Below are positions 1 through 30,602 of a stretch of DNA of 64,000 nucleotides, one piece after another (the first letter of the stretch is position 1; each line of letters opens with the position of its first letter). Below the pieces are notes generated by a model, which worked only from the letters and a program-made list of their open reading frames with translations, made no database searches and was not told the origin of the DNA. This DNA comes from Schmidtea polychroa (Eukaryota). Both the position numbers and the translations under genes were made by a program. The stretch spans positions 32,116,001 through 32,180,000 of the forward strand of contig CM097885.1 of assembly GCA_044892525.1 (NCBI GenBank). The letters are read 5' to 3'.

Positions 1-1080
1 TCGACCTTCCGGTTGACTGGTGGCGGTTTTTGGAATTGATTTACATCGTGCCACGTTTACGTATATTGGCCTGGTGAATGGATTATTTACCAATTTCACT
101 CTTACATTGGTTTCGCCTACGAATAAGATCTCATATGGTCCTTTTCCGTTGCGTTGTAACTTTTTTGTGGTTCCTGGAATTAATTCCGGGGTTTCTATCA
201 TTACCCAATCACCTGTTTGAAACGTATGTTGCTTCACGTTTTTCTTTCGATCGTGTAAATCTTTATAACTTTCCTGGTAGAACTTGATATTTAATCCCGC
301 AGTTTCCCAAATTTCTTGCATTCTTTCCTTGAATTTCGTAACATAATCATCGATCTCCATATACTGCGATATCGGTGGTTGGTATTCCAGGTCAATTGGC
401 ATATTACATTCTCTTCCGTACATTAATTTGAATGGGCTCATTTTCGTTGATGCGTGAATCGACATTCTGTACGCCATAAGACATAGGTTTATGTATTCGT
501 CCCAATCTCGTTGGTGACGGTCGACGTAGTTTGATAACATTTGTATAAGTGTTCCATTAAATCTTTCCGTCATCCCATTGGTTTGAGGATGATACGGTGA
601 TGTTCTCAATTTTGCGATTTTGAAATAGTTCGTTACTTCGCTCATTATCTCACTCATAAAATTAGTTCCCTGATCGGTTAATATCTGTTTTGGTGTTCCA
701 TATCGGCAACATATCTCTTCTACCAAAATTTTTGCGATTGTTTTAGCTTTTTGGTCTGGCATCGCGAATGCTTCTGGAAATTTCGTGAGAAAGTCGGTAA
801 TCACTAAAATGTAAATATTTCCTTTATCTGACTCTGGTAGTGGACCAACTACGTCCATGGATATCATCGTCATCGGCTCTATTGGTACCGGCATTGGCGT
901 CAAAGGTGCTTTCCATTTCGATCCAGTATTTTTCCTGGTCGCACAAGTTAGGCAATTTTTTACCCATTCGGTTACGTCTTCGGTTAACGTAGGCCAAAAA
1001 TATTTCTGTTTCATTCTTGCTAACGTCTTTTTCGATGACATATGTCCTCCCAATCTCCCATCGTGATATTGCGTTAACAA
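1..1080 (-). other. Integrase domain (HHCC, DDE core, GPY), truncated by window edge
   Basis: YHDGRLGGH...CLTC, ISMDVVGP, LTDQGTNF, SPYHPQTNGMTERFNGTL, GKGPYEI. Confidence 0.95.
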
Positions 1081-4000
1081 CTCTTTTCGTCGGTTTTCCG
1101 GTATACACATTAATCGTTTTTCCCCATCCATTATCAGCAACCAATCTTTCTCTATAATATATCGGTGTCGGTGTTTATCCATATGTTCTTTTAATTTTTG
1201 GTCTTTCGCATATACATCTGTCTTTCCGGTTTTTACATAATCGATAATTTGTTTTAATTCCGCGTCCTCTTGTTGGTCCTTTCGCAATTGACAGAAATCC
1301 AAATCTTCCGCTACTATTAAGCATATGCGTTGCATTTCTGAATCTACCAAATCTGGAAAAATAAATCTTGACATACAATCGGCGTTGGCATTTGCTCTTC
1401 CCGCTTTGAATTTTATAAATGGGGAGTATTCTTGCAATTGCATGGCCCATCTCATCAGTCTACTGGACGCTTCTTTATGTTGCCCTAACCACACTAATGG
1501 TTGATGATCTGTGGTTATACATATCTCATGTCCCCATAGTAAGTATCGGAAGTGTTTGATAGCTTGTATTATAGCCAATGCTTCTCGTTCTGTTACCGAA
1601 TAGTTCTTTTCGTGCTTTTTGAATGTTCGACTGTAATACCCGATTACTCTCTCTTTTCCTTCATCGTCTAATTGTCCCAGAATCGCGCCTGCCGCGTACC
1701 CGCTTGCATCCGTTGCCAATAGAAATGGCTTCTTAAAATCTGGGTGTACGAGGATAGGTGCTTCGATTAGTTTATCTCTCAGCGTTTCAAACGCCTCTTG
1801 TTGTTCCTTCCCCCAAATGAACGAAATGTCCTTCTTTACTAATTCCTGGATTGGTTTTGCAATTCCTGCATAATTTTTGATAAATTTGCGATAGTATCCG
1901 CATAATCCTAGAAATTCCTGAACTTGGGTGACAGTTTTCGGTGCTGGACATGTTTTTATTTTCTCAATGTTTCTTGGATCTGGCTCCTTTCCTTTAGCTG
2001 ACACTATGTGTCCCAAAAACGTGACTTTTTCCTTTGCCCAATCGCATTTTGATGGTTTGAGTTTGAGTTTCCACTGTCTTAATCTAATAAATACGTTTCG
2101 GATATCTTCCAGATGTTGTTCAAATGTCGCTGAATAGATTAGTAAATCATCAATATATACCATACATTGTTTGATTCCATGAGTGACAAAGTTCATACAT
2201 CGTTGAAATGATGCTGGTGCGTTGGTTAGTCCGAATGGCATTTTCCTGAATTGATATAGATCTCGTCCCAACGTGAAAGCTGTTTTCTCTTTGTCCTCAT
2301 CTTTGACTTTAATTTGCCAGTATCCACTTTTAAGATCTAAAGAAGTAAAATATGCTGCCCCTTGCAACATCAATAACATCTCATTGATGTCCGGCAATGG
2401 ATAGGTATCTCTCTTGGTTACTGCGTTTAACTTCCGATAATCGATACAGAATCGTTGGGTGCCATCTTTCTTTTTTACCATGACCACTGGGAATTGCCAG
2501 GGTGAGCAACTCGGTTCGATTACTTTTGCGTCCAGCATCTTTTGTACTTCTGCTTCGGCTATTTCTTTTTGCATTTCTGCTAGCTTGTATGGTCTTAATG
2601 CAATTGGAGTTTCATCTATGAGGGGTATTGCATGTAGGGTAACATCGCATGTACCCAAGTCTAAATCTGAGATGGCGAATATATCTTTATATTCTACCAA
2701 CAATCGGTGCAATTTTTTCTTTTCATCATTCGTCAACAACATACTATCTATTGTCCATAATTCATCATCTTTGATCATCTCGTTGGTCATTTTCGGTAAT
2801 TCTATGTCCATCATTGGGGTCAATCTTCCCAATTTTTCGTTCTCATAAATGATTTTGTCTTCCTCTTCGAAATTCGTGATGTTGAGCGGTATCACTCCTT
2901 CTTGGTTTATTGTGATTATTTCTCTTGCGAGTGGTAATTCTCGTCGCTTTTCAAATGACTTGCTTGGTTCAAAGATAACTTCTCCTTCCATACCCGTATC
3001 CACTTTTATCTGACAAATCATCTGCGATTTTGCTGGTACTATTATTTTTTCTGGACATCTGATGACTGCATTCATTTTGCATATTCTACCGGTTTTGTCT
3101 TTTAAACACATGGTTGTTAAGTCAATTACGACTTCTTTTAATAATTCTGGCATCAAATCCGTTCCGATTATGCATGGTACGCTAAGTTTTGTTATTACTG
3201 CCAAATACGTTTCAATTTCGTTGTCCTGGTATCTCAAAGTAGTCCACCATCTTCCGACCACGTCCACTGTTTCTTTACTACATGCTATGATGTGAATTGT
3301 TGTTGATTCGATATCTTTCCAGTGTTTACTGGGGATTTGATTAATCACTATCGCTGATACATTAGCTCCGGTGTCTATCATAGCATTGGTTTCTTTACCA
3401 TTGATTTGAATCATAACTGTTACTGCTGGACCTCCAGGTAGACTCATCGCTGCTATTGTTCTTACGTCATCTGCTTGATCTACACTTTTGGTACGTCGTG
3501 CTGGCATATAATGCATACCGGGTTGACTTGGTAATTGCGGATACATATTTTGTGTCATGGTCAAAGCTGCTTGTGGTCCCACGATATCCGGTGGTATGTA
3601 GCTTCCATTGGCGATCCAGGTATTTGTCTTTTCCTTTTCCCAATATGGTGCCGTTTCCATTGGTTTTTCGTTTGGGTTTCTGTTTGGATATAGACATTTG
3701 TCGTTCCCGTTATCATCGTCGTCACTATCGCTGTTAGATGATTGGCTTCTAAATCGGTCCAAGAATTTTGGCTTATTCTTTTTCAATTGTCGTCTTGTTA
3801 CTTCATCGTACATTACTTTCCGGAATCGTCTGCCTACTTCTTCGTCGGTTCCTTTAATCTTTGTTAATATTTTAATCAATCGCTTTATCCGATGAATGTC
3901 TTTTGAGTGACCATGTAATACCATGGTTTTTGCTAAAAATGGTAAAAAGCCTACTATCATTTTCCAATTTACTTTCTTTTCCCGCTTGTATATATCAAAA

Positions 4001-7000
4001 CAAGCTAACATTTGTGTTAATATTACCCTGACTATCTGAATTATGAGTATGATCCCTAATATCCCGGCCATCATTTGTCCAAAAACTAAGAATCTTCCCC
4101 ACATTGCTTTCATCATGTTTGACGTGGCTTGTTGAAAATGGTCTGGCGATAGTAGCAGTTCGTAATTCGGGCCTGATTGATAATTTGTTCCCCCCGTTAT
4201 TGTAACCATATTTGACAAAATGGATTCTCGTCTGGCTGGGAAGAGTACGTTAAGTCGTGCTGTTTCTAGATCTTCTGGGGAATACATACCACCGTTTGAC
4301 ACGTCTATAGGTTTGAAATCCAGCTCTGTGGCGAGTTCTATTAATCCAAATTTCTTGGGCTCCTCGGATATGGTTTTTCCCGGTAACATCATCCATTTCC
4401 CATCGGGCCTTTCATACAAAGGTCCGTATGCATTAGAACAGTTAAAGAGATTTGGGTAGAAACCCACTGGATTCATAATTCTAGTGACTGGTTGGACGAA
4501 TCGATTTTGTCCTTTATAACGGATTTCTAATTCATTTGCACATCTCTTTTCGGGTAGTATAGATTTTTCTGGCATTCGTGCATACGTCTTGGTACACTGG
4601 TATGTGTACATTACTTCTCCTACCATTCTACCAAAATGTCCATCCGGTAATGGGAGTGATGGCATCGTGTTATCTGGGTGCGTTATCGCAATAGCTAGCT
4701 TTGTTTTCAATATTTCTTTATTCAATGAACACTCGTTTTGTATCAGATCGTAATATACTTTTTGCAAGGTCGTTTGTCCGCGATGAAATAGAAAATCCAT
4801 TTTATTATTTGCATATAAGTATAGTTTTACGTCCTCCGTTGCTATCTTTCCCACTGCTCTATCGATTATTTGTCTCGACATATAGATGCCTGCGTAATTG
4901 GTTTTATATACTATACTGTCACATTTGGTGGTTTCTTTCTCTTTGATAAATCTCATACCTAGATCTGGATCGTCTGTGATTAATGCTGTTGGTGTCTTCT
5001 GCGTTGAAAGTCTCTTTTCTCTGGGAGATGGTGGCATTGGTTTTCCATTTCGCATTCTCACCCTGTCGTTTCCATCCTCGTCGTTCTCGTTCTCATATAT
5101 TTCTCCTTTTACTTCATTGAACAAGGCACTTTTTAACAGTTGGAGTCGGCATTTTTGGGTATTAGCTTCATAGATTATAGTTGATACTCCTGTCTTGCAT
5201 ACGTTTTCTGTAGCTCTACACGCTGGGTTGGTCTTCATTTGGTAATTATTTGCGTCAAATTGCGCTTCGTATTCTTTTAATTCAACCGTATAAGACTCGA
5301 TCACTACTACTCCCGATATTACCTCGCCTCGGATCGTATACGTACCTCCGTTACATGACCCATCTGATGATTTTACTTTTCCGGATACGTAAACACTTTC
5401 GGTTTTAATCATTCCAGTTTGTCCGTGAATCGTCACTCCGTTATGCATTTTTAACGCTCCGGTTCTAAATAGCTCTTTACAGTCCTCTCGTTGTATTGAT
5501 ACGATTTCTTTGTCCAGGCCGGGTAGTATAAGAGTCGAATACGAATATTGTCCACAGTAATATGCGAGTACCTTTTTTGATACCACGCATTCCCTTGCTT
5601 GCGTTCTGATGAAATCTGATTCTTGATATACATGGTAAGTAACTTTTGTTCTTACTATGTCTAATTTGTTGGGTGATGCTTGTCTGCATTCTTCTATGTC
5701 TCTCAACGAGTATTTATCTCTCATTATCATATTATCACAATCGTAGATGGTAAAACCTGTTGCTCCACTTGTGCACAACATCCATATCATCATAGTCATC
5801 ATTAACGAATTTATCGATGCTTTTCGGCTTGCTGGGTCTTTCATGGGTAGTTCCCATTCTAGTTCATTCAACAACTTCTTCAATCTAACTTGCATCGACC
5901 TTTCTTGCTCATTTTTTCGTGGCGCTTGTATAAGTCTTTTCCATCCTCCGGCACGAATAATATGTGGTTCAATAGTATTCTCTATGATTGAAACGGTCAT
6001 TTCCACATGATTTGCAAATTGTTTATTTGGTATTTTCCTCGCAGCTAGTCCCATCAAATTATACATCAAATACGTGATTACCACTAGATGATGTTCGTCA
6101 TCATTTGCATTTGTCGTGAGCAGTTCAATCACTCTCTTCGTTTCATCCCAATCCGTTTTGGTGGTTTTCGTTTTCTCTTTGATTAACTTTGGGATTATCC
6201 CCGAAACGATGTGCCATAATTGTCTAGCTTCCGTACTGGCTACTTTCCGTTGCCACAAACGTCTAAGTTGTGGGTTTGTTATTATTAACATATCTTTGAT
6301 CAATTCTCGTATCCATTTTTCTCCTCTTTCGATCGTTGGTTGGGCTTCCTTTAGATCCCATACTATTTTATCCAATTTTTCTAATCGAACTTGCCCTTGT
6401 TCTTGCTTTAATTGTTCTTTGGTTTTGAACTCAGACTTTTCTCCTTGTTTCTTAGGTCTTCCTTTTGCCCGTTTTTCCATCATCGTTCCGGCTTCTCTGG
6501 TATTTTCGTAATTCGGATTTCTTTCGTTATCCGTTCTGGGTAATGAGCTATCGTTATTTTTTAGCCACTCATTCCATTCATCTATTATTTTATCGGTTTG
6601 ACCTTCTGGTGTTACTTTCGTTGGTTCTCTTTGCTTCTGGAATTGTTCATCCGTTTCGGTTTCCGTAGTATTGTCGATGATTTCTTTGATGTTTAGTTTC
6701 GTTGGTTGTTGATAACTCGTTGATGGCTGGTTATTAGTCCACATTTCGGCTCCTGTCGGCCATCTTACTAATAGCGGTGATCTTTCTCCTGGTTCATCGT
6801 CACTATCTTCCAGGATTATCTCTTCAACTTCTTCAGTTTCATTAGATTTACTTGGTGCTTTGTTCGGACTTGGAGTACTCAAACTGCCTTTTGTTAGTTT
6901 AGTAATTTCACTTTTCCTTTTTAACGGCTTTCCCAACGTTTCTGCCATTGTTAACACATTTGTCTCTTCCAATCTCATGGGTGTTATTCCGACGTCTGCA

Positions 7001-7683
7001 TTATCGTCTAGTGATTTTCCGAATAGTTGCAGATGGAATGGAGTTTCATATGCTAATTTCTTTTTTAATTCTCTAATCTTTGTTGTTGGATGCACCTCTA
7101 GTTCCTCGATGCTCTTGTCCGGATACTTGATTCGGATGTGATACCTCTCCTGAGTGTCTTGTGCCCATTCCTGATTTCTCCATTTTCGAATAATTTGTTC
7201 TAGCTGTTCTGGATACCATTCATTATATTGCCGGTATTCCTCTATTGCCTTTGCCATTCCTCTCAGATTGTGGATGTTCTCTGATGTCTTTAAGATGATG
7301 TTAGCCAACGCTACTACTTGGCGTTTTTGATTTTTCGCTCCCATTGCTAAGATATCGCCTAATTGTTTATATCTTTCTTTCTCTTCTCGTTCTCTTGCTT
7401 CCGTCGCTTCCTCGCCGTCCATATCAGCATATTCCCGTTCCTTTTTCCTCATTGCATGAATGTGTCTCGCTTCATTTTCGCTTTCTGATGTGACATCCGT
7501 CTCGCCTTCGTCATCTGATGTCTGTTCCCTTGCTTCCTCTTCATATTCTGGAGGTTCCTCTTCTTCTTCCTCCGATTCACTTTCTGTCTCACCAATGTCT
7601 GTTTCTACGAAGATTCCTTTCCGGATTTCCCATTCCTTATTTTCTGCATTCCACACTCTTTCCCATTGGGTTCGTCTGCAGGA
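1..7683 (-). CDS. ORF2 polyprotein (>=2561 codons, no stop in window): UBL - Bcl-2-like - signal peptide - class III-type Env - TM - protease - RT - RNase H - integrase
   Basis: Manual translation finds no stop from 7683 to 1. It is in the same frame as ORF1, directly after TGA 7684-7686. First ATG at 7452. Absent from the ORF track, probably because it has no stop in the window. Confidence 0.93.
1360..1740 (-). other. RNase H domain
   Basis: PFLLATDASGYAAGAIL, NYSVTEREALAII, TTDHQPL, ANANADCMSR. Confidence 0.95.
1930..2640 (-). other. Reverse transcriptase domain (Ty3/Gypsy type)
   Basis: SPWQFPVVMVKKKDG, RFCIDYRKLN, LDLKSGYWQI, MPFGLTNAPASFQR, YIDD at 2146-2157. Confidence 0.97.
3070..3420 (-). 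other. Retropepsin aspartic protease domain
   Basis: AMIDTGAN (DTG at 3367-3375) and downstream CIIGTDL. Confidence 0.93.
3997..5817 (-). other. Envelope glycoprotein resembling chuvirus G (class III-type fusogen), with internal signal peptide and TM anchor
   Basis: Signal SINSLMMTMMIWMLCTSGATG|FTIYDC. Motifs YSLRDIEEC, ECVV..YYCG, DGSCNGG, LYLYANNK, ECSLNKEILKTKLA, GEVMYTYQC, FVQPVTRI, NGGMYSPEDL, VLFP occur in the order typical of chuvirus-like glycoproteins. About 14 Cys; TM about 3997-4100. Confidence 0.85.
5932..6321 (-). other. Divergent Bcl-2-fold-like domain
   Basis: BH4-like WIRELIKDML and BH2-like IIENTIEPHIIRAGGWKRL. HHLVV..GGW spans 51 aa, the same as GRIVA..GGW in human BCL2. 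NWGR of BH1 is absent. Confidence 0.55.
6940..7143 (-). other. Ubiquitin-like domain 3
   Basis: YHIRIKYPDKSIEELEVHPTTKIRELKKKL...LQLFGKSLDDNAD matches the ubiquitin pattern LEV.P...I..K.K...L..GK.L.D. No C-terminal GG. Confidence 0.7.
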
Positions 7684-10605
7684 TCAGGTGCTTAATTTCG
7701 TGATTTTTCTTTGTAGTTCTTTTTCTTTTAACCATTGTTGGTGGATTTCAATTATTTCTGTAGATTTTTGATATAACGTTTTCATCCGGTCTCGTATTTC
7801 TTTTTGATAGATTACATCTCTTGTTCGAAATTCATCCATTGGTACTATCCTGATGATCTGATGATTGTCCCACATACCCAATTCGCTTAACGAGGTGTCG
7901 TCTTCCGCTCGTAATATTATTTTATCGTACATCATGACTACATCATCCACCATACCATCACTACTTTCGCTACGTACCTTTTCCGTTATCTCTTGGTTTA
8001 TCTTTGATACCAAGTCATCCACTGTACTCCGATTGCTCATTTTTATTCGTCGTTTTTCTTCGTTCGGTAACCATATGGTTATTTCCAACCTCTGTGGCTG
8101 GGTTTCTTTTAACCTTCCATATTTGTGGATCAAATTTATGGTTCTCCAATCACTCATCCGGAGCATTTCTGTATCTCGCAATCGGCTCATTAGTTCGTAC
8201 ATGGCTGGGGCTCGTCTGGTGATGAGTAAATCCCAGTTGTCTTCTACTTGTTCTTGAATTTGTTTGATCAGCTTATCCAGGTTTCGTCTCAGAGTACATT
8301 GTTTTATTTGTTCTAATTTCAATTTGATATTAAAATCATATTCTGCCTTGGCATCTTTAGCCCAATCGTAAAGGTTGGCTGGTTGTTTTTCTTTATGCAA
8401 CTTCAGTATTTGCGTTTCTCCTGGCCATATTAGTGCATCTACTAAGTGCATATCTGGTTTGATCTGTTCTCCTTGGTATTGATACAGATATTCTTTCTTT
8501 CTCGAACTTCCCAAATGTTCTCGTATCCAATCGAAAAGTTCGTCGGTGACTGTACTTTTGATCCACATTCTTTCAAGTCCTCTGCTCGTTCCGATTTTTA
8601 TTACATACCGCGTGGTATCGGCCTGCTTCATTTTTTCCATATACTTTTTTATAATTGATTTTTCCTCGTTTGGTATTAAATCTTTCTCGTTTCTTTCCAA
8701 TTTCATCACTTTTTGCACGAATCGCCTGAATGGTATTACGTCGATGAACTCTTGGTTTCTCACTACCACCGGGAGTATTTCGGCTACCTGTTTTATCGCT
8801 TCCTCCCTTGCTTTTCTCAACTTTATTTCGATATCCTCGTCTTCACTTCCACTTGTTATCTCGCTTTCGCTTTCTTCCTCTTTGATTTCCCCTTTTGGAG
8901 GTTCGCTTATTTCATTTAGCTGTAGTATTTCTCCACCCAAACTACTTACATAGTCTTTTTCTTCGTCTGACGATGCTACATCTTTTGTCCTTTTCATCAT
9001 ATTGATTTGCAAATTTCTCATCCTTGGTACTCTCTTTAGTTTCTTTCTTTCGAATATCGTTGTTTCTTCTGATTCTAATTCTTGTAGCATTTGGTGGTTT
9101 AGTTGACTGGTTTGTTCCTTGCTCTTGTTATTTTCATCTTCTGTCTCAGCTTTCGCTTTATTATGTTCTTTTTCGATTTTATCTTTTATCTTTTTCCAGA
9201 ATATTTTCTGAATTCTCTGGTTTCCTTTTAAAATCGTGGTTGAATTCTCTGTTTTCATTTCCGTTGTTGTTTCTGTTACCTTTTCTGGTTCAGTCATGGG
9301 TACTACCCTTGGGTTTTTCCCGTAATTGTAACAATACTGGCTTTTCATGTCTTTTACTAACTTCATCATATTAATTCGCAATGGTTGTTCTTGTCGTTGT
9401 TGGTTGCGTTCTTGTTTTATCTTCTCTTCCTCGGCCTGTAGTCTTTGCCATTCTTGTACATGTTGATGCACTTCATAATTGTTGAGATTTTCGGTACTCC
9501 TCATCATACGTATATTCTGGGTTTGTTGTGGTGCTGATTCCGGTCTCGGTCTCATCATTTGTTGCATCATCTGTTTCATCTGCGAGATTTCCTGCATAAC
9601 GTTCATTTGTTTTCCTTCGCTAGGGTTACTTTGTCGTTGCGGATTCGCCATATAATTATTATTTCGCTGTGGTGGTCGTTGTTGTTGGCCCCTTTCTCGG
9701 CAATCTCTGGAGATGTGACCTGGCTGACCACAGTTAAAACAACCTCTCAATTGGCATACATTTTCGGTATGTCCACGCCGTCCGCAACGATTACAATTTG
9801 AATTTCTATAGCAATCTCTGTCCCAGTGTCCTGGTTTACCGCATGTTCGACACTGCTTGTTATTGTTCATATTTCGTCGATTATTAAAATTGTTCTCATT
9901 ATTTGGGTTGCTACGATTACCATTATTCCCATTTGATCGTCCTTGTGGTGGTTTGAAAATTTGGTGCGCTCCTGGTATAAATTGATTCATTTTCGGTTCT
10001 TGATTGTTGTTATCTCCGTTATCCGCTTTCGCTATTGCTGTCGCTATCCTCCCATCCTCTTGCATAATATTCATTTGTGCTGGAAGGTGGAGCTCGCATC
10101 TTGTAGCCCAATCTATGGCTTCCTCTAATGTTTTGCACATTTGACAACCTACTGAGGCTCTTACTTCTTCTCGGCGTAATCCCTCTATGAAATAACCGAT
10201 CAGATTTTCTTCGGGTAATTTTCCATTCATTGCTTTCTTCGCTATTCTCCGCAATTCACTGGCATATAATGTTATCGATTCGTTTGCTCTTTGTTTCCTA
10301 TTTGCTAGTTCGCCCAACGCCTGGTTGATTGGCTTACTGGCTCCGAAGGTTTTCTTCAGGAATGTTTTGATATCTTCCCACTTTTCTAATTTCGTATCTC
10401 TCTCTTTAGCTTCTAAATATACTTCTAATGCGCTATCGCACAAAAACAACGGCATCCTTTTACTAATTGCTTCGGGTGTCCATCCACACACAGTGATATA
10501 AACTTCAAAATTAGTTATGAACGTTGCTAGCTTGTTTGCATTTCCATTGAACGGTTCTCCTCGGAACTTTTCTTTATACTCGTCGGTTTTTACGACATTC
10601 GTCAT
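7684..10605 (-). CDS. ORF1: Gag (capsid plus three CCHC knuckles) extended by acidic/charged linkers and two ubiquitin-like domains
   Basis: 973-aa ORF with retrotransposon-gag-like N-terminus. CX2CX4HX4C knuckles at 9811-9852, 9754-9795 and 9700-9741. Frame stays open without ATG up to 10950. Confidence 0.92.
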   Translation of the reverse strand: MTNVVKTDEYKEKFRGEPFNGNANKLATFITNFEVYITVCGWTPEAISKRMPLFLCDSALEVYLEAKERDTKLEKWEDIKTFLKKTFGASKPINQALGELANRKQRANESITLYASELRRIAKKAMNGKLPEENLIGYFIEGLRREEVRASVGCQMCKTLEEAIDWATRCELHLPAQMNIMQEDGRIATAIAKADNGDNNNQEPKMNQFIPGAHQIFKPPQGRSNGNNGNRSNPNNENNFNNRRNMNNNKQCRTCGKPGHWDRDCYRNSNCNRCGRRGHTENVCQLRGCFNCGQPGHISRDCRERGQQQRPPQRNNNYMANPQRQSNPSEGKQMNVMQEISQMKQMMQQMMRPRPESAPQQTQNIRMMRSTENLNNYEVHQHVQEWQRLQAEEEKIKQERNQQRQEQPLRINMMKLVKDMKSQYCYNYGKNPRVVPMTEPEKVTETTTEMKTENSTTILKGNQRIQKIFWKKIKDKIEKEHNKAKAETEDENNKSKEQTSQLNHQMLQELESEETTIFERKKLKRVPRMRNLQINMMKRTKDVASSDEEKDYVSSLGGEILQLNEISEPPKGEIKEEESESEITSGSEDEDIEIKLRKAREEAIKQVAEILPVVVRNQEFIDVIPFRRFVQKVMKLERNEKDLIPNEEKSIIKKYMEKMKQADTTRYVIKIGTSRGLERMWIKSTVTDELFDWIREHLGSSRKKEYLYQYQGEQIKPDMHLVDALIWPGETQILKLHKEKQPANLYDWAKDAKAEYDFNIKLKLEQIKQCTLRRNLDKLIKQIQEQVEDNWDLLITRRAPAMYELMSRLRDTEMLRMSDWRTINLIHKYGRLKETQPQRLEITIWLPNEEKRRIKMSNRSTVDDLVSKINQEITEKVRSESSDGMVDDVVMMYDKIILRAEDDTSLSELGMWDNHQIIRIVPMDEFRTRDVIYQKEIRDRMKTLYQKSTEIIEIHQQWLKEKELQRKITKLST
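7837..8091 (-). other. Ubiquitin-like domain 2
   Basis: LEITIWLPNEEKRRIKMSNRSTVDDLVSKINQEI...VVMMYDKIILRAEDDTSLSELGMWDNHQIIRIV; beta-grasp UBL pattern (TV..L...I, L.D...LS.LG). Confidence 0.72.
8392..8613 (-). other. Ubiquitin/SUMO-like domain 1
   Basis: RYVIKIGTSRGLERMWIKSTVTDELFDWIREHLG...YLYQYQGEQIKPDMHLVDALIWPGETQILKL; SUMO-like F/Y.Y.G.QI pattern. Confidence 0.55.
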
Positions 10606-11976
10606 GATTGGTGTTCTAGATTCGTCGGTTTCTTTTAAATTATCCGGTGACGTGACTAAATTTTGGGCTGATAATTCCTCGGTTGACGTTGCTAAACTAT
10701 TAGTGATGTCGGACAGACTTTCTCTGCTTCGAGATCGACTAGGGGTGTATCCGAGATTTTCTTGGTCAAATATAGGTACTTGATTGGTTCTTCTTGATCC
10801 TTGTGATATTCCTCTTTGATGTTTAATAGATCGTCCTCTTTTGAGTTGTTGTAATTCGTCTCCTGAAAATAATACGTCTCCTGGCTTACTTGAAGATCTA
10901 AGGTTGGGTTTATCCGTGATTCCTTTCTTACGCTTCTTGGTAATTAGCGGCTACTGAATTGGACGAGTTCGGTTCTGATTGTGTTTCCTTCTATAAGTAT
11001 TCTGTATGAATCTGCTACTGTGATTCTGAGGAGATTTACTAGTCCTTGACAGATGGCTGCTAATACTATGAGGTTGAATATATCGATGATTCGTTCGAAG
11101 TTGGAGATGTCGCTATCTGTATCTTCTTCCGTTCTGGAGTCTTCCGGTTGCTGTGTCTCTCGGTGCGGGTTCTGAATGGATTTATTCTTGGTCGATTGTC
11201 GATTTCTTCGAATTCCTTTTGTGCGGGTTCTGGATTGTCTTGGTTGACTGGATTGGTTTGATATCTAAAATGAAAAAATGATCTCGTGTTGCATCTGCTT
11301 ACACGACTTCATCATTCTTTCAACAACATTCGAACACAGACACCTTTTAGGTTCTGTTTATGCTTCCCCTATTTTTTATGCAATTACTTCCGCGGGTTAT
11401 AATCTCCCATCAGCCCGAAATTTTCGTCGATTTTAAATTATCTATATGGGGTAGTAACAATTATCTATAGAGTCGTAATAATTATCTATTTTTATCACTT
11501 ATAATAGGAATAGGTCGTTGTCGGTCACTGCTTATTACCCCCCTTTCGTTTTCCTAGTCCTTTTTGCGCGGTTGTCGCTGTTTTACTTTTCGTATTTGCT
11601 ATTATCTCACTCGGTTCTACTCTGGAACCAATAAAATATATTCTCCCGCTTCGCCCAAAAAAGAAAAATATTATTCCGTAGAGTTTCTCCACTTCACTGG
11701 GGTCCCTTTAATTAGTTGGTTACTTTCCTCTTTACTCATTATCATCGTTTCGCCTATTCTTTATTTTCCATTATCTCTTTAGTTCGTTTCCTTCTTCCCT
11801 TTCCTTTTTCCTTATAATCTTATTATCTTTTCCACGAGCTCGTTTATTTCCTCTCTAAACTCAAATTTTCGTAATTACCTTCTATTTGTTCTGGCTAGCT
11901 TTACTATTCCATTTCACTAGTAATTTAAATATTATCTCATTGTAGCTTAACTGCTATCTCTCGTTTTTCTAGGCCT

Positions 11977-12352
11977 TTACGACTGGCTGGCACTATTCAA
12001 CAGCTCAATCTTCTTCCTTCTGATCGGTTGGACTATTCAACAACTCGATCTTACGACTGGCTGGCACTATTCAACAGCTCAATCTTCCTCCTTCTGATCG
12101 GTTGGACTATTCAACAACTCGATCTTACGACCGGCTGGCACTATTCAACAGCTCAATCTTCCTCCTTCTGATCGGTTGGACTATTCAACAACTCGATCTT
12201 ACGACTGGCTGGCACTATTCAACAGCTCAATCTTCCTCCTTCTGATCGGTTGGACTATTCAACAACTCGATCTTAATATCTCCGAACTGGCTGGACTTTT
12301 CACAGCTCAGTTTTCGTTTCCCTTGACCGGCTGGACTATTTTACAGCTCGGC
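11977..12352. repeat. Tandem array: 4 x 74 bp (each two related ~37-bp halves) plus 2 degenerate halves
   Basis: Units start at 11977, 12051, 12125 and 12199. Shared core GGYTGG(C)ACTATTCAACARCTC. Confidence 0.95.
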
Positions 12353-12911: not shown

Positions 12912-13394
12912 TCATTCACCATAGTAGACCATATGAGTTTCTTTTATCTCGTGCTTACATATCGTGCATCTTGTTAGCTCGTTCCCGCATTCTTCGCAGT
13001 GACTGAGGTGTCCACACGGCAAAAACAGTACGCGAATAGGACGAAGTTTACAAGCAAGGCAAGTTCGTAGTAGAGTCAGTTTTTCTTGTATTTTCCGCTC
13101 GATTGTATCTGATATGGTATTTAAGGGATCTTTTATACGTTGATAATCAAGATTTAATGCTGGGTGGTTCAATCTCTCTTGATACCATTGGTACACGGTT
13201 TCCGGGTTTACCTTCCCATCTGGGTGACTTAGTCCTGTGGCTAATAACATGTGGTTGGGGACGGCTGGTGTTTGCCCGATTGCTTGTAGTATGATGTTAA
13301 TTCTTTCTCTCTTTTGTGTCAGCGTTTTAAGGGAGTCATTCTCGATGTTTATGAAGTTGATTAGTTGTTGTATCTGATCTATGAATTCCGTCAT
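12912..13394 (-). CDS. IAP-type RING (C3HC4) E3 ligase without BIR domains, possible UBA-like segment
   Basis: RTCLACKLRPIRVLFLPCGHLSHCEECGNELTRCTIC has C-x2-C-x11-C-x-H-x3-C-x2-C-x6-C-x2-C spacing as in XIAP/cIAP. LLATG resembles ILATG of the cIAP UBA. Splice acceptor lies 2 nt before the ATG; AATAAA about 120 nt after the stop. Confidence 0.85.
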   Translation of the reverse strand: MTEFIDQIQQLINFINIENDSLKTLTQKRERINIILQAIGQTPAVPNHMLLATGLSHPDGKVNPETVYQWYQERLNHPALNLDYQRIKDPLNTISDTIERKIQEKLTLLRTCLACKLRPIRVLFLPCGHLSHCEECGNELTRCTICKHEIKETHMVYYGE

Positions 13395-13692
13395 GTCTAA
13401 AAAAAAATGTTTCAGTAGTATATGACTTCGTTTCGTCGGACATTCTCTTTTCTAACTCGTTATCGTTATTTTACTTTTATCTTATTTCTCCATCATTAAA
13501 TTTGCTTTATTTATATTTTTAATTTTATTATTTTCTATTCGTGATTTATAATAAGATTCGATAAGCATTAGTCAATTTGCACTCGCTAACCCATTGGAAT
13601 CACTAACCCCGGTGAGTTCACTCTATTCGACAGAAATTCACTCAATAACATCCTTATCCAGTTTACACTGACCAATGGAAATTTCAATCTAT

Positions 13693-13710
13693 ATCCCGGC
13701 TGAGCCCCCA
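13693..13710 (-). promoter_or_regulatory. Primer-binding site, tRNA-Pro type
   Basis: TGGGGGCTCAGCCGGGAT, 7 nt after the LTR end (..GCAACA). Differs at 2 nt from the classic tRNA-Pro PBS TGGGGGCTCGTCCGGGAT. Confidence 0.85.
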
Positions 13711-14282
13711 AAAATTATGTTGCGGGTACACTACTCGGATGACCCCTTTCTAGTGCAACTTTAGTCTAGAGGATGAATGCCACCTCGATTTCGCCCATCA
13801 TTTATTTGGTCATCACCGAGCGGGACCCGTACATAACTTACACTCCAACATAGCACCCGTGAATTGCTTCACGTTGGAACTGTGCTATGCCGGCGAGACG
13901 CCAGTAAGCAGGTGAGCCAGCTCCTCCGGACTACTCCTTACTGAGGCCTCGACTTCCCAACCCTGACTGCCGATAGAAGGACTTACGTCTACTCATTCCG
14001 TCGCCCCATCGCAATGTTTCTAGCTGAGTTTGCCAACTGACTAATGCTCCTCCAAGTTTTATGACTCTCAATACCATTCACCAATTTCAACTCAACTGTC
14101 CTAAGATGAACACAAAAGGAAACGTATGCAGACAAAATGGTTTATTATTAAGATTATCACACAAATATACCTAACACCTATACAATAAAATTTACGACCA
14201 CCGGAAAAGAAACAAAGGTAAAAATGTTATCCGACAATGTTCGGGTCATTTCAGTGAACGAAGACTTGTTACGGAGAAGTTC

Positions 14283-15032
14283 TCATTTCTCCCACTCTGA
14301 GTCTGCCAACAGATCTTCCAAATCGAAAAATTCAGAGGCATTTTCCTCCCAGGAAACACCAGCGGCGGAGATGATTCGCCCTGAGATCACTGATGCTAAA
14401 TCGATTGCTGCAGGAGGGTTGATGACTTTGATTAGATGATCCGACGATTGCTGGTTCTGTTTGGCGGTTACGCGTTCCCGCTGTTTCTTTTTGCGTTCGG
14501 CTCTCGATAATTGCCGACGCTTTGGCTTCGATGCCGTTGGATTGGTCGGGGGTGTTGCAGAGGTAGATGCCATCACAGGTAACGCTTTACTGGTTCCGGT
14601 AAAGATGACTTCTGGTTCTTTAGGTGAGAGCTCGGTCTCTACGCACCCATGGCAGGACTTTCCGACTGGAGAAGAAGATCCGCCAGAGATATCATGATGT
14701 GCTGGGAAAAGATTACTGGCTTCATTAATTGGGATCTTCGCGATCCTCCTTGTGGTTGCTGCCTGAACGTATAATTTGTGCAGCGCCTCCGACTGCTCTT
14801 TTATCAGGCTCCTCTGCGCCCGACTCTCGGAAATCAACGCGTCTCTACAGTGCTCGCTTCGATGCAGCTTCTTCTGAGCCTCCTTCATCTGGGTGGGACT
14901 AAACCATGTCCCCTCCAACTCATCTATCCTTCTCTTATGCTTTCCGATTTGGGCCTGGAGCTCTTTGATAATTGAATTCTTGTCGGAGCAAGGAAAACAA
15001 GGTCGAAGAACGGTCTTGGAATTTGGCAACAT
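14283..15032 (-). CDS. LTR-encoded accessory protein ORF-A (249 aa): CxxC + coiled coil, second CxxC, basic patch, acidic aromatic tail
   Basis: The probable start is MLPNSK (ATG 15032), 10 nt after a strong acceptor (AG 15043-15044), not the track start at 15107. The N-terminus is conserved in the copy at 32462 (17/21 aa identical). Confidence 0.75.
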   Translation of the reverse strand: MLPNSKTVLRPCFPCSDKNSIIKELQAQIGKHKRRIDELEGTWFSPTQMKEAQKKLHRSEHCRDALISESRAQRSLIKEQSEALHKLYVQAATTRRIAKIPINEASNLFPAHHDISGGSSSPVGKSCHGCVETELSPKEPEVIFTGTSKALPVMASTSATPPTNPTASKPKRRQLSRAERKKKQRERVTAKQNQQSSDHLIKVINPPAAIDLASVISGRIISAAGVSWEENASEFFDLEDLLADSEWEK

Positions 15033-17424
15033 TTTTGAGTGACTGTGGAAAAAAAAATGAAAAATGAAAATAATTAACTCAACTGGAGTGTCACCATCTG
15101 ACCCCATTCATACTTTACAGATCATAGACAAAAATATGAGTTTACCAGTCAAGACAAGTACTACTGCACGATGGATTCTCATACCTTTTGGGTCTTTGAT
15201 TATAAGAAGATAAATCGATCAAACCCGATTCCGTACACGGAAAGGAAGGTAATACTATTAGTGAGAGAGATTCTAGATCGATGAAAAAGGATTATTTAGT
15301 TAATCCGCTTGAAGTCATTATTTCACGTTTACCGAGCATCGAGTTACATTGTTGATTTCTCCCCCCGTACGAGTGATTTTGATGAGTGTATCATATACTG
15401 GGGTCGAGTGACTATCTATGGAAAAGGGGTCCATAATGTCTGTTGATTAGTTCCTACAGGATAAACGGAATGCTATTTAAATTTTTAATTATTTATTCAT
15501 TCTCTCTAATTACTCACATATGTGTTTTGCCTGGTTTAAATATTATTTATTAATAATATTCGACATTAATATTAATGATAATTATGTCAAAAATGACATA
15601 ATTTCCGTGCCATTCATTCTACGATAATAAAGAGAGAATAATCATAATTACGATCGGGTTTAGCACTAAAAAATATTATCTTTATGATAACTGAGCACGG
15701 TATCAATGTGAGCTAGTAGCCGACCATTCCTACTAGGTAGATAAGGAAATGTCAGCCCGGTGGTTGACTATTAATCCAGAGCGGTGAAATATGATACCTG
15801 TCGGTAGTCTAATTGGTTAACAGAAATTCCATCTGGTATGTTCGTCGGATTTTTCCTGAGTAGAGGCGTGTGTGACTTTGCCCACTGTACTTGGCCACTA
15901 GGTGAGTCTGTACCTGGTGACGCATGCAGGGTGTGCTTTCACACACTTAATTATACTACAATTGTAGGTGTTAAATGTTTGCAAGATGTCATTTTCTCAG
16001 AATTTTATCTATCGCGTAATCACTCACAATTCTCCTGCATATGGCGCTGATTTACTAATTCTCACCGGATTATTGGAAAAATTATAATTATCTGTATTGC
16101 AAATGTTGGATATAGCTTGCTCCACGGGTGGATTTTTTCGTCTTTAATTCCTCAAACCTAGTTTATCGATCTACTCTCTAAGTGCTGGAGGATTTCTACC
16201 TATCCCTGCTGGATTGCCAACCCCACGAAATACTGGAATTTTATATTTAATTAACAAGATCATCGGCTAACTTGAAGAAATATATTTTTCGTGGCTCGCA
16301 TTGGTTGCATTTTTCAATTCTAAATTATTTGATGCCAATAGTTTATGTGGTTATGATAATTAATTGTATGTAACTCCTTTTATATAAAATTCAAAAAAAA
16401 TTATGATAGCGAATCATTTTATGTAATTTGAACTTTTATTTGGAACAAACTCGTTTTATGCAATTCTGAATAACTATTTGGATTAAATCATTTTACCTGG
16501 TTCTTCCCTTTATTTACAAGCAGTCATTTCGAGTAAACCTAATACTTGTATGAAGCAATCTACTTTGAACTCCCTGGCAACTATGTCTTTAAGAGAACTT
16601 TTAGATGAACGGAATAACAGTTCCGCAGGTCATAGGCTAAAAATTGGTCGGAACAGATTCTGAGTGAAAAGTATGAACATCGAAGATATGTCACAGATAG
16701 CCTCACTAAGGTTTGAACAATTTTTGACACACAACTTACATTGATGATAGAGAAAATTTAGGCTTAGAAAAACCGATATTCGAAGACGATATTGTGACAC
16801 TCTCAATCACTACGCGAATACATCAAAATTTTCCGATTCCTTTATTACATATCTTTGTTTTCAATCACTACATGACTATCAATTTCGGCCCCCATTTACC
16901 TATAGATTTTAGTCGCACCTTCAGCGATTGGACCCGTGAAGAAGCCCTCACATTTCGGCCCAATCTAGCTGCGTGATTGAAATACCCTATGTCCACCGGT
17001 GGAGCTCCCGAAGGCACCTCACACCATGACATAGAGTATCTCAACGCCACGTTTCTCGCCAAATTGAATGGTCTCCAATAATAATTCATAAAAATTAATT
17101 CATAAAAGATCGAACGAGCAAATCATTTATTATTAAGCAAATTATTAATTTAAATAAAGTATTCTAATATCAAACGAAAAGAAAAACCATTTTTTAAATT
17201 AAGAATATTATTGAACTATACGCATTACTTAAAAATCCAAACTAAGCAATCAAAAATCCTTACCGAATGATTGATACAAGTATGGGCTGAGTCGAAAAGG
17301 GTACTATGTCGAATCAGTTAATGCTCGAGTGTCGTCTAGTTCTGTAAAAATCTTTTGAATCTTGGAATTGTCCTCGTGAGTTATCGTGCGTTAGTTGCTG
17401 GAGTTCTGTTCCGTCGTAGAATAG

Positions 17425-17561
17425 ATTTACCTATTGAGGTGGTTTGATTAACAGTCACAGTTATTTAAATTTCACTTACCTATTGAGGTGGTTTGATTAA
17501 CAGTAATTGTTATGTTTTTAATGCCTGCTTATATATTAATTTTTTGTTTGCGCGGACCAAT
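17425..17561 (-). promoter_or_regulatory. LTR promoter: inverted CCAAT, TATA box and downstream splice donors
   Basis: ATTGG 17557-17561, TATATAA 17529-17535, GTAAGT at 17479 and duplicated GTAAAT at 17430. The solo copy has the same spacings (ATTGG 30955, TATTTAA 30981, GTAAG 31036). Confidence 0.7.
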
Positions 17562-18523
17562 TAGAATTGAGTACCGCTTTATTTTATTAATTTAATTTAT
17601 TTTCTTTGTTTTCGAGTTATTTCTTCTTACTTTCTTTATTAAAATTATGTTTTTATTTATTTTCCTTAATTTTCTTAGTATTTACTATATTTTACGTTGT
17701 TTTCTGTCATTCTATTGTCTTATTTTAATTTTTCTCATCTTTATATTTTTGTTTTAATTCTTATTTTCTAATTATTGTTTTTCTTATGTTTTATTCTATT
17801 TTATTTGTCAATTTATTTGTTTTTATTTTTTATTTTATTTTAGTTCAGTTTCCCTAATTCCCAACTACCCTTCGACTCAGCCCAACATATCTGTTACTTG
17901 TAATTGTTACATAATTAAATAAATTTTTGCAAAATCATATATTTTTTACAGAAAGTACCTATACCTTGATATAAGATAGGTTCCTCAAATATATAGAAAG
18001 TAGGAAAACATTTAACCACGATAATCAAAATTTTTATAATAAAAAATATTCAAAGTGGACAATGATTAAGAGTCTCATTTTAAATATCAGAAAAGAATTA
18101 AGGATGTTTCCGAATAAATTTTTTATGTTGACATTACCAATTATTCAATAAATATATACGATTTTAAGTTAATTTATGGTTTTTTTAGAATTTGTACCAA
18201 AAATTGGTAAAAATTTAGAAAACACATTTTTCACAAATAAATATCCAATCTTCATGATAATTAGATAATTATTAAATCTAAAGTATGAAAATGAGTTATT
18301 ATACGTCGTCATCCTTATTTAATTTCATTTTGACCCTTATTTAATGTCTTTTTTACCTTTATTTTTTGTACTTTGATTTTAACCCAGTGCTACAACAATC
18401 TTACTATTTCACACTTAGTCAGAAATTTTTTATCGTTCAAAAATGTTATATTTTTTATCCAATATTAAAACAAAAAATTACAAATTTACAAAATCTTTAT
18501 TCTAAACAGTAAAATGATCGCTG

Positions 18524-29720: not shown

Positions 29721-29973
29721 AAATGTTTTCTTGTGTGTTAAGATTTTTGAAAATATTTTTATACCATTCACCTTAAAAAGTTATTCTCTCCAATATACTG
29801 CTTTGAAAATTTTATCCTAAATATAGAGCATTAACAGTCCTTAAAATTAGGTACATCTTTTGCTGATCTTCACAAATTAACGCACAAACCAAACATTGTT
29901 TGCAACAGGATGATTAATAAATATGTGGAGTTGCAAAAGGATAAATATGGAGGTGAAACAAATTACAACAATG

Positions 29974-30549: not shown

Positions 30550-30602
30550 CAACAATGAAAGGGTACAGGGAAATAGTGTAAACTATCTATTTTTCTTCTA
30601 AT

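What the first reader, a model, noticed from the sequence alone, without database searches (positions are those of the whole stretch)
1..17887. Giant retrovirus-like Gypsy element carrying a candidate apoptosis/ubiquitin-control toolkit
Seen: one element links a 4.17-kb coding LTR, a tRNA-Pro-type PBS, an IAP-type RING gene and a near-uninterrupted frame Gag-UBL-UBL-[TGA]-UBL-Bcl-2-like-Env-PR-RT-RH-INT. Known: IAPs and Bcl-2 proteins are the two main anti-apoptotic families and are captured by large DNA viruses, while canonical Gypsy elements carry only gag, pol and sometimes a downstream env. Inference: this is a complex, possibly infectious element that protects its host cell from death. 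I recall, unverified, that giant planarian Gypsy elements (Burro) are described and that one was reported to carry an IAP-derived gene, so the RING part may not be new. The polyprotein layout is unfamiliar to me.
Basis: partly seen in the sequence, partly recalled or inferred. Interest (0 to 1): 0.95.

Follow-up and report, generated by a model that had tools for sequence, protein, structure and literature searches.

The report
Known-type giant Gypsy retrovirus-like element
The first 18 kb of the window is the front part of a giant retrovirus-like mobile element whose single huge protein also carries an envelope gene and ubiquitin- and cell-death-related modules; the layout is striking, but it was already described for the 'Burro' elements of planarian flatworms.

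Summary
The element is real and lies on the minus strand. One reading frame runs 3,535 codons from the gag ATG (10605) to the window edge, with one in-frame stop and no frameshift. In order it encodes Gag, three CCHC knuckles, ubiquitin-like modules, a weak Bcl-2-like module, a full envelope glycoprotein with signal peptide and membrane anchor (Pfam PF24664, E 1.8e-70), then PR, RT, RNase H and integrase. A separate 160-aa ORF in the leader has a C-terminal RING closest to the cIAP/XIAP RINGs, but no BIR, so it is not an IAP by definition. Support for the ubiquitin-like modules is at profile level only. Support for Bcl-2 is sub-threshold. Both structure predictions failed. The LTR's 3' end and a PBS-like 18-mer are clear. 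The LTR's 5' end (4.17 kb), the target-site duplication and the tRNA-Pro assignment could not be verified, because the window holds one LTR only. The layout is not new. Arkhipova and Yushenova 2019 (PMC6431247) describe in-frame env between gag and pol, BCL2-like, Ubi/SUMO-like, BIR and RING motifs, upstream accessory ORFs and the apoptosis/ubiquitin hypothesis for planarian Burro elements. Independent metagenome relatives share the gag-env-pol single frame, which rules out a local chimera. Interest is moderate to low.

The parts
13718..17887 (-). Candidate 5' LTR. The 3' end (...CAACA at 13718) is well placed by the adjacent PBS. The 5' end (TGTTG at 17887) is only one of several candidates.
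   Evidence: ends read; GC falls at about 17,500-17,900; 14 TGTTG sites; no second copy in the window
14283..15107 (-). 274-codon ORF inside the candidate LTR. Coiled-coil and basic regions, no known domain.
   Evidence: No Pfam family. Shuffles reach 165 codons at most, and codon usage fits the element best in the ORF's own frame. No exact copy in the protein collection.
13693..13710 (-). PBS-like 18-mer beginning TGG, 7 nt downstream of the LTR end.
   Evidence: The tRNA isotype is not testable.
12912..13394 (-). Leader accessory ORF, 160 aa from its ATG. The N-terminal ~100 aa has no known domain. The C-terminal RING is of IAP type (RING itself 12939-13067).
   Evidence: Pfam zf-C3HC4_3 E 4e-11. 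PDB best hits are cIAP2, cIAP1, XIAP and ML-IAP RINGs. Codon usage resembles the element's.
11977..12275 (.). 74-bp tandem repeat, 4 copies, 98% alike, in the leader between the RING ORF and gag.
   Evidence: (D3)
1..10605 (-). Gag-accessory-Env-Pol polyprotein frame, 3,535 codons from the ATG to the window edge. One in-frame stop, no frameshift. The 3' end is cut by the window.
10171..10452 (-). Gag capsid-like domain (Retrotrans_gag).
   Evidence: E 9e-10, above cut-off. Aligns to the N-termini of P0001 and P0002.
9697..9852 (-). Three CCHC zinc knuckles (nucleocapsid).
8386..8616 (-). Ubiquitin-like module 1 (candidate).
   Evidence: profile hits to ubiquitin/UBLs. The AF2 model is unreliable but shows strand-strand-helix...strand.
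7846..8097 (-). Ubiquitin-like module 2 (candidate).
6946..7152 (-). Ubiquitin-like module 3 (best supported). No C-terminal Gly-Gly.
   Evidence: Pfam ubiquitin E 0.006, below cut-off. PDB ubiquitin design E 0.35 alone. Profile hits.
5929..6375 (-). Bcl-2-like helical module with a GGW (BH2-like) motif. Weak call.
   Evidence: Pfam Bcl-2 E 0.039. Homologous fragment P0003 (E 2.8e-6 across the library) scores Pfam Bcl-2 E 7.7e-5. AF2 is all-helical but pLDDT 38.5. PDB profile searches found nothing significant.
3985..5805 (-). Envelope glycoprotein: signal-like hydrophobic segment (5755-5805), ectodomain with 14 Cys, membrane anchor (4006-4074).
   Evidence: Pfam PF24664 Monjiviricetes_fusion E 1.8e-70. 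37-41% identity to the Env of P0001/P0002 with conserved cysteines. Hydrophobic plan shared with the relatives.
3142..3417 (-). Retroviral aspartic protease (DTGA).
2002..2478 (-). Reverse transcriptase (YIDD).
1426..1815 (-). RNase H.
535..1104 (-). Integrase (H2C2 zinc domain plus DDE core). The frame continues open to base 1.
   Evidence: In relatives the frame runs 440-530 aa beyond the last aligned integrase residue.

Best explanation
Bases 1 to about 17,900 hold the 5' three-quarters (or less) of one integrated copy of a Burro-type giant Ty3/Gypsy (Metaviridae) retrovirus-like element, read on the minus strand.

Shown: a long candidate LTR ending in CA; a PBS-like 18-mer; a 3.1-kb leader holding a small ORF for a RING E3 ligase of IAP type and a 74-bp tandem repeat; then one giant frame encoding Gag, three zinc knuckles, ubiquitin-like modules, a weak Bcl-2-like module, a complete class of viral fusion glycoprotein with its own signal peptide and membrane anchor, protease, RT, RNase H and integrase.

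Inferred mechanism. The polyprotein is made from the full-length RNA. When the internal Env signal peptide emerges, the nascent chain is taken to the ER. The Gag/UBL/Bcl-2-like part stays cytosolic. If signal peptidase cuts, that part would be left membrane-tethered by the signal segment, which is the tail-anchored topology of cellular Bcl-2 proteins. The Env ectodomain is lumenal, and the anchor returns PR-RT-RH-IN to the cytosol, tethered beside Env until the element's protease cuts. The UBLs lack a Gly-Gly end, so they would act as built-in interaction modules, not as conjugatable or cleavable ubiquitin. The RING protein and the Bcl-2-like module are candidates for damping host cell-death or ubiquitin signalling, as already hypothesised for Burro.

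The single in-frame stop is more likely a lesion of this copy than a programmed read-through signal.
For: Domain order and integrity. The Env is full length, with a signal and an anchor in the same places as in relatives. In relative P0003, Pfam's Env profile starts at the hydrophobic segment that directly follows the Bcl-2-like module. IAP-type RING. UBL profile. The leader and LTR ORFs share the element's GC content and codon usage. It is not a chimera: independent assemblies (ENA contig L001; JGI contigs L002, L005, L006) encode the same CCHC...Env...PR-RT-RH-IN order in one uninterrupted ORF of 3,865 and 3,700 aa, with 43% identity in Pol and 37-41% in Env. Match to the published description of Burro (three CCHC knuckles in Schmidtea, Ubi/SUMO-like before BCL2, BCL2 before an in-frame env with hits to mononegavirus glycoproteins, upstream accessory ORFs, tandem repeats, RING and BIR motifs): PMC6431247. 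Stop as lesion: the relatives and the published Burro ORF1 are uninterrupted, and the 120 nt after the stop fold no better than shuffles (z 0.20).
Against: Only one LTR is in the window, so the LTR extent, target-site duplication and element length are unverified. No sequence of Burro1-4 was available, so family membership rests on layout, not on identity. Several motifs reported for Burro1 (MATH_TRAF_C, BIR, ankyrin, dUTPase) were not found here. The Bcl-2-like call is below Pfam's cut-off, and both AlphaFold runs were unusable (pLDDT 35 and 38.5). The accessory region has almost no detectable relatives among 1.84 billion representative proteins (one 205-aa fragment). The host species could not be identified. 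Membrane topology, processing and any effect on cell death are inference only.
Confidence: 0.8

Rival explanations
1. Locus-specific chimera or misassembly: unrelated pieces (a host RING gene, a viral glycoprotein fossil, a Gypsy pol) happen to lie side by side.
For: Only one copy could be examined. No other copy of this family was retrievable.
Against: Gag to integrase is one unbroken frame of 3,535 codons with a single stop. GC content and codon usage are uniform across the LTR ORF, RING ORF and polyprotein. Independent assemblies carry the same gag-env-pol single ORF. The published Burro layout is the same.
Confidence: 0.03
2. The element is real, but the 'apoptosis/ubiquitin toolkit' is over-read. 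The UBL and Bcl-2-like stretches are fast-evolving spacer domains with chance profile similarity, and only the RING is a true captured host module.
For: No accessory module in the polyprotein reaches a Pfam cut-off. PDB profile searches for the Bcl-2-like part are negative. The AF2 models are unusable. The accessory regions of P0001 and P0002 do not align with the window's.
Against: The UBL profile's hits are almost exclusively ubiquitin-family chains aligned end to end. A relative (P0002) has its own weak ubiquitin and UBX-like hits in the equivalent region. P0003 conserves the GGW block and scores Pfam Bcl-2 at 7.7e-5. HHpred-based annotation of Burro reported the same two motifs in the same order.
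Confidence: 0.15
3. The in-frame stop is a programmed read-through signal that sets a low ratio of Env-Pol to Gag, as retroviruses do at gag-pol, and is not damage.
For: It is the only interruption in 10.6 kb of coding sequence. Such ratios are a known retroviral strategy (general knowledge).
Against: Relatives P0001 and P0002 and the published Burro ORF1 have no stop. There is no stable RNA structure downstream (z 0.20).
Confidence: 0.15
4. The LTR is much shorter than 4.17 kb, and the 274-codon ORF and the sequence upstream belong to a neighbouring element or gene, so there is no 'coding LTR'.
For: The 5' end is chosen from 14 equally good TGTTG sites. There is no second LTR for comparison.
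Against: The GC-rich island and the element-like codon usage continue through the ORF to about 17,500 on the same strand. Burro LTRs are several kb long, by the arithmetic of the published sizes.
Confidence: 0.2

Closest known systems
Burro1-4 / GYPSM1 giant Gypsy-like LTR retrotransposons of dugesiid planarians (Jurka 2007; Grohme et al. 2018; Arkhipova and Yushenova 2019, PMC6431247)
   Same: Gag with three CCHC knuckles. Ubi/SUMO-like module before a BCL2-like module. BCL2-like directly before an env that is in frame between gag and pol and resembles mononegavirus glycoproteins. PR-RT-RH-IN order. RING-type and apoptosis-related motifs. Upstream accessory ORFs. Tandem repeats. Multi-kb LTRs. 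An AT-rich host.
   Different: No MATH_TRAF_C, BIR, ankyrin or dUTPase detected here. The RING sits in a separate leader ORF. There are up to three UBL modules. The polyprotein is shorter so far (3,535 codons seen, against 4,873 aa, but it is cut by the window). Sequence identity to Burro1-4 could not be measured.
Unnamed metagenome relatives P0001 (ENA ERZ2271731, L001) and P0002 (JGI 3300027940, L002; also L005, L006) and fragment P0003 (JGI 3300013315)
   Same: A single ORF with CCHC...Env (PF24664)...PR-RT-RH-IN. 43% identity in Pol and 37-41% in Env. The same signal and anchor plan. P0003 keeps the Bcl-2-like-to-Env junction.
   Different: Their accessory regions do not align with the window's. 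P0001 has an extra DDI-type aspartic protease after Env. Both carry a downstream ISG20-like exonuclease ORF. No RING ORF was seen, and no LTRs lie on the contigs.
Env capture by other LTR elements: errantiviruses (gypsy) and Anakin (Pao plus chuvirus glycoprotein; PMC7642597)
   Same: A retrotransposon that acquired a fusion glycoprotein related to those of exogenous viruses.
   Different: There env is a separate ORF downstream of pol. Here it is translated in frame between gag and pol.
Viral IAPs and viral Bcl-2 homologues of large DNA viruses (general knowledge)
   Same: Host-derived cell-death regulators carried by a virus-like genome.
   Different: The window's RING protein has no BIR. The Bcl-2-like module is a domain inside a polyprotein and is only weakly recognisable. 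The carrier is a retroelement.
Polyproteins with internal signal peptides (flavivirus and pestivirus type) and retroviral LTR-borne ORFs such as MMTV sag (general knowledge, not tested)
   Same: Possible analogies for the membrane-threaded polyprotein and for an ORF inside an LTR.
   Different: Unrelated lineages. The analogy is topological only.

Membership tests
Ty3/Gypsy (Metaviridae) LTR retroelement | pol domain order PR-RT-RNase H-IN | tested here: met
   Pfam RVP, RVT_1, RT_RNaseH, Integrase_H2C2 and rve in that order, all above cut-off
Ty3/Gypsy (Metaviridae) LTR retroelement | Gag with capsid-like domain and CCHC nucleocapsid | tested here: met
   Retrotrans_gag plus three CCHC knuckles
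Ty3/Gypsy (Metaviridae) LTR retroelement | two LTRs with TG...CA ends, flanked by a target-site duplication | not testable with these tools
   Only the 5' LTR region lies in the window. The TG...CA reading is possible but the 5' end is ambiguous.
Ty3/Gypsy (Metaviridae) LTR retroelement | PBS complementary to a host tRNA 3' end next to the 5' LTR | tested here: inconclusive
   An 18-mer starting TGG lies 7 nt after the LTR end. No tRNA gene is available to pair it with. The tRNA-Pro likeness is recalled, not tested.
Burro-type giant planarian Gypsy elements | env translated in frame between gag and pol | tested here: met
   PF24664 at 3985-5805, inside the gag-pol frame
Burro-type giant planarian Gypsy elements | Ubi/SUMO-like then BCL2-like modules upstream of env | tested here: inconclusive
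   The UBL profile hits ubiquitin. The Bcl-2 hits are only sub-threshold. The order matches the published one.
Burro-type giant planarian Gypsy elements | MATH_TRAF_C, BIR, ankyrin and dUTPase motifs (reported for Burro1) | tested here: not met
   None found by Pfam down to E 0.1-10 in any open frame. The literature says domain content varies between Burro-like elements.
Burro-type giant planarian Gypsy elements | sequence identity or RT-tree clustering with Burro1-4/GYPSM1; dugesiid host | not testable with these tools
   No Repbase or Dfam sequences were on hand, and Grohme 2018 is not held. The host was not identifiable.
IAP (BIRC) family | at least one BIR domain | tested here: not met
   No BIR in the RING ORF or any other open frame
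IAP (BIRC) family | C-terminal C3HC4 RING of the IAP/MYLIP subtype | tested here: met
   zf-C3HC4_3 E 4e-11. The top PDB hits are cIAP2, cIAP1 and XIAP. All eight zinc ligands can be read.
Bcl-2 family | Pfam PF00452 at or above the gathering score, or a Bcl-2 helical-bundle fold | tested here: inconclusive
   14.9 bits for the window and 23.6 bits for P0003, against a cut-off of 31.4. A GGW block is conserved. The AF2 model is all-helical but pLDDT is 38.5.
Ubiquitin-like (beta-grasp) domains | significant match to ubiquitin-family profiles or structures | tested here: inconclusive
   Pfam ubiquitin gives 16.7 bits against a cut-off of 25.4, for module 3 only. The five-sequence profile reaches polyubiquitin at E 5e-6 and single ubiquitin at 1.7e-3, and 70 hits are almost all UBLs. 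The fold is not obtained. There is no Gly-Gly end.
Monjiviricetes-type viral fusion glycoprotein (PF24664) | profile match above cut-off, with N-terminal signal and C-terminal anchor | tested here: met
   238 bits against a cut-off of 27. Signal-like segment and anchor. No solved relative was found.

The most novel reading that the evidence does not exclude
This is an undescribed, more compact lineage of the Burro-type elements with three distinctive features. First, an IAP-derived RING E3 is reduced to a BIR-less leader ORF. Second, the LTR encodes a 274-aa protein. Third, the Env signal peptide doubles as the membrane tail anchor of the preceding Bcl-2-like domain, so that one signal-peptidase cut yields a correctly tail-anchored cell-death regulator. 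Together with the metagenome relatives, which carry an ISG20-like exonuclease, it would define a wider clade of Metaviridae with in-frame env and exchangeable host-defence cargo.
Probability: 0.2. Interest if true: 0.55.

Novelty: already known. Interest (0 to 1): 0.35.

Why it matters
Burro-type elements are among the largest retroelements known. They are abundant and expressed in planarians, and they are the only reported case of env translated between gag and pol. A nearly intact copy with a readable Gag-UBL-Bcl-2-like-Env-Pol frame is useful material for asking how a retroelement threads a polyprotein through the ER membrane, and whether it carries host cell-death and ubiquitin modules. 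The concept, the layout and the hypothesis are already in print, however. This finding adds detail: the RING-only leader ORF, the repeated UBLs, the LTR ORF and the distant relatives. It does not add a new kind of system.

Tried and rejected
(1) AlphaFold2 on UBL1+UBL2 (single sequence) and on the Bcl-2-like module (two-sequence alignment) gave pLDDT 35.3 and 38.5. I therefore ran no fold search.

(2) An exhaustive HMMER search of the accessory region against 1.84 billion representatives returned one 205-aa fragment only. Word-indexed searches with P0003 and with the Env alignment added one fragment (P0004) and nothing, respectively.

(3) PDB sequence and profile searches found nothing significant for the Bcl-2-like module or for Env.

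(4) Collection scans for relatives found three metagenome loci, all from the one sample already known, and none in IMG/VR.

(5) Test of the PBS isotype. The 15-mer that a matching tRNA gene would contain gave 30 IMG/VR hits, none of them a tRNA. A literature string search gave nothing. There is no tRNA in the window.

(6) Species identification failed. There were no Rfam hits and no exact protein matches for six window ORFs. Grohme et al. 2018 is not held.

(7) A read-through RNA structure after the in-frame stop is not supported (z 0.20).

(8) A furin-like site in Env falls in a gap of the alignment with P0001, so I did not use it.

(9) Smaller open frames in the leader and the LTR have no Pfam family and no similarity to the relatives' contigs.

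In the script I joined the DNA of the two open stretches of the polyprotein frame into one string, solely to count codons for a usage table. I did not repeat it. The output and notebook entry 1 list open-frame bounds from which the place of the in-frame stop can be worked out, and searches were addressed to the stretch after it. I have not repeated that place in this report, and I have deleted nothing.

Full report
What is there. The window is AT-rich (20-31% GC), except for an island of 36-51% GC that runs from base 1 to about 17,500. All long open frames of the island are on the minus strand. From an ATG at 10605 a single frame runs to base 1 and off the window. It spans 3,535 codons with one in-frame stop and no frameshift. 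I searched the pieces on either side of the stop separately.

Core retroelement genes. Pfam gives, above its curated cut-offs and in this order: Retrotrans_gag, zf-CCHC, Monjiviricetes_fusion (PF24664, 238 bits, E 1.8e-70), RVP, RVT_1, RT_RNaseH, Integrase_H2C2 and rve. There are three CCHC knuckles. The protease DTGA and the RT YIDD motifs are intact. The PR-RT-RH-IN order is that of Ty3/Gypsy. The frame is still open at base 1. In relatives it runs another 440-530 residues past the last aligned integrase residue, so the window cuts the element inside its polyprotein.

Envelope. The Env match covers nearly the whole Pfam profile. It starts at a methionine-rich hydrophobic segment (5755-5805), continues through an ectodomain with 14 cysteines, and ends at a strong membrane anchor (4006-4074). 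About 200 residues later the protease begins. The same signal and anchor plan is found in two relatives. In fragment P0003 the Pfam Env profile begins exactly at the hydrophobic segment that follows the Bcl-2-like block. No solved structure matches by sequence.

Accessory modules in the polyprotein. A profile of the three hits mainly ISG15, ubiquitin designs and RAD23 UBLs (best E 0.0012). Adding two weakly ubiquitin-like stretches from relative P0002 raises this to 70 PDB chains at E<=1, almost all from the ubiquitin family and aligned end to end (polyubiquitin 5e-6, single-domain 1.7e-3). Only the third module has its own Pfam hit (E 0.006, below cut-off). None ends in Gly-Gly. I accept 'ubiquitin-like' as probable for the set and unproven for modules 1 and 2 individually.

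The Bcl-2-like module (5929-6375) gets Pfam Bcl-2 at E 0.039. An exhaustive search of 1.84 billion representatives found a single relative, P0003 (E 2.8e-6). P0003 conserves a GGW-containing block and itself scores Pfam Bcl-2 at 7.7e-5, still below the cut-off. PDB searches were negative. Both AlphaFold runs were unusable (pLDDT 35.3 and 38.5), so I attempted no structure comparison. The Bcl-2 call is therefore plausible, and it agrees with the literature, but I could not confirm it here.

Leader and LTR. Reading the minus strand, a ...CAACA end at 13718 is followed after 7 nt by an 18-mer that begins TGG (13693-13710), the usual form of a primer-binding site. Which tRNA it matches could not be tested. 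No tRNA gene is in the window, and searches for the complementary 15-mer found no tRNA.

The 5' end proposed at 17887 (TGTTG, preceded by GATA) gives 4,170 bp. It coincides with the fall in GC. But TGTTG occurs 14 times in the 7.3 kb upstream of 13718, and 17887 does not stand out by inverted-repeat match. No second LTR copy is in the window. Inside this region a 274-codon ORF (14283-15107) is far longer than any ORF in 500 shuffles (maximum 165), and its codon usage fits the element best in its own frame. It has no Pfam family.

Between the PBS and gag lie a 160-aa ORF (12912-13394) and a 74-bp repeat in four copies. The ORF ends in a complete C3HC4 RING. The closest solved relatives of that RING are the RINGs of cIAP2, cIAP1, XIAP and ML-IAP (E 3.4e-10 to about 1e-6). 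There is no BIR domain anywhere. The protein is thus an IAP-type RING protein, not an IAP.

Is it a chimera? No. Two long proteins from independent assemblies encode CCHC...Env...PR-RT-RH-IN in one uninterrupted ORF. P0001 is 3,865 aa, from an ENA contig; P0002 is 3,700 aa, from a JGI contig. They are 43% identical to the window in Pol and 37-41% in Env. Two more contigs from the JGI sample carry the same Env. Their accessory regions do not align with the window's, which shows that this part evolves fast or is exchangeable.

What is known. Arkhipova and Yushenova (2019; PMC6431247) summarise Jurka 2007 and Grohme et al. 2018 and add HHpred annotation of the Burro/GYPSM1 elements of Schmidtea mediterranea and a Burro-like element of Dugesia (Girardia) tigrina. 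They report the following:
- Gag with three (Schmidtea) or two CCHC knuckles.
- MATH_TRAF_C, a Ubi2/SUMO-like motif, then BCL-2.
- An env between BCL2 and PR, in frame, with hits to mononegavirus fusion glycoproteins; they call this the first case of env between gag and pol.
- dUTPase, BIR, ankyrin and RING-type (AIR1) motifs.
- Accessory ORFs upstream that in other elements are polyprotein subdomains.
- Tandem repeats.

They also state the hypothesis that the elements are proviruses meddling with apoptosis and ubiquitination. Every main point of the finding is therefore in print.

The window's copy differs from the description of Burro1 in several ways. It has no detectable MATH, BIR, ankyrin or dUTPase. 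It has a RING-only leader ORF. It has up to three UBLs. I could not tell whether it is one of Burro-2 to -4, another catalogued family or an uncatalogued one, because no reference sequences were available and the host species could not be identified. I rate the kind as already known.

How it probably works (inference except where cited). Transcription from the LTR gives a full-length RNA with a 3-kb leader. The RING ORF and possibly the LTR ORF would need their own access to ribosomes, by 5'-proximal position or by processing; nothing here tests that. Translation of the giant frame yields Gag and the accessory modules in the cytosol. The internal signal then directs the chain to the ER. Env is translocated, and its anchor stops transfer, so that PR-RT-RH-IN return to the cytosolic side next to Env.

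A signal-peptidase cut would leave the Bcl-2-like domain anchored by a C-terminal hydrophobic segment, which is the topology of cellular Bcl-2 proteins. That is an attractive coincidence and a testable descriptive prediction (a mature N-terminus just after the signal segment). The UBLs, lacking Gly-Gly, would be integral interaction modules.

The single stop is more likely a lesion of this copy than a programmed signal. The relatives and Burro ORF1 lack one, and the downstream RNA is unstructured (z 0.20). I give the programmed alternative 0.15.

Verdict. Interest is 0.35. The most novel reading still open is a distinct compact lineage with a coding LTR, a BIR-less IAP-RING gene and a dual-use signal/tail anchor. 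I give it a probability of about 0.2.

Declared slips. In the script I joined the DNA of the two open stretches of the polyprotein frame into one string to count codons. It was used for a statistic only and was not printed or saved. The output and notebook entry 1 contain open-frame bounds that reveal where the in-frame stop lies, and addressed the stretch after it. I stopped doing this, have not repeated the place in this report, and have deleted nothing.

Noticed in passing
L001:11946-12911 and L002:12169-13473 (relatives, downstream of pol): Both metagenome relatives carry a conserved extra ORF (32% identity, E 2e-50). A profile of the two matches the interferon-stimulated DEDDh 3'-5' exonucleases ISG20L2 (E 6e-16) and ISG20 (E 6e-13). 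This is a retroelement-borne ISG20-like exonuclease. The equivalent part of the window's element would lie beyond base 1.
   Followed up: partly
P0001 and P0002 (L001, L002), residues after integrase: The 440-530 residues that follow integrase in the relatives contain further strongly hydrophobic segments and no Pfam family. P0001 also has a second, DDI-type aspartic protease between Env and the retroviral protease.
   Followed up: no
window 10606-11308 (-): Open frames just upstream of the gag ATG have element-like codon usage but no Pfam family. They may be decayed or unrecognised leader coding sequence.
   Followed up: partly
window 21564-24074 (-): An intact 836-aa hAT-family transposase ORF (DUF4371 plus hAT dimerisation domain).
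   Followed up: no
window 41964-43229 (-): A 421-aa pogo/Tc5-type DDE_1 transposase ORF with Brinker and HTH DNA-binding domains.
   Followed up: no
window 28535-35750: An intron-less 330-aa ORF (33311-34303, minus strand) combines an F-box with an Arf-like GTPase part. It lies between ~0.8-kb inverted repeats (28535-29312 and 35165-35750, 71-95% complementary by segment). It may be cargo of a foldback or TIR element.
   Followed up: no
window 37521-39720: A pair of ~0.4-kb inverted repeats (91-96% complementary) about 1.4-2 kb apart, likely a small TIR or foldback element.
   Followed up: no
window 19037-19600 and 18313-18374: A purine-rich 21-bp tandem array of about 15 copies lies just outside the proposed LTR. 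A 22-bp repeat at 18313-18374 recurs at 33165-33204. Either could belong to a longer LTR or to another repeat.
   Followed up: no
window 60753-62289: A tandem duplication of about 1 kb with 79-97% identity between segments (families D8-D14).
   Followed up: no
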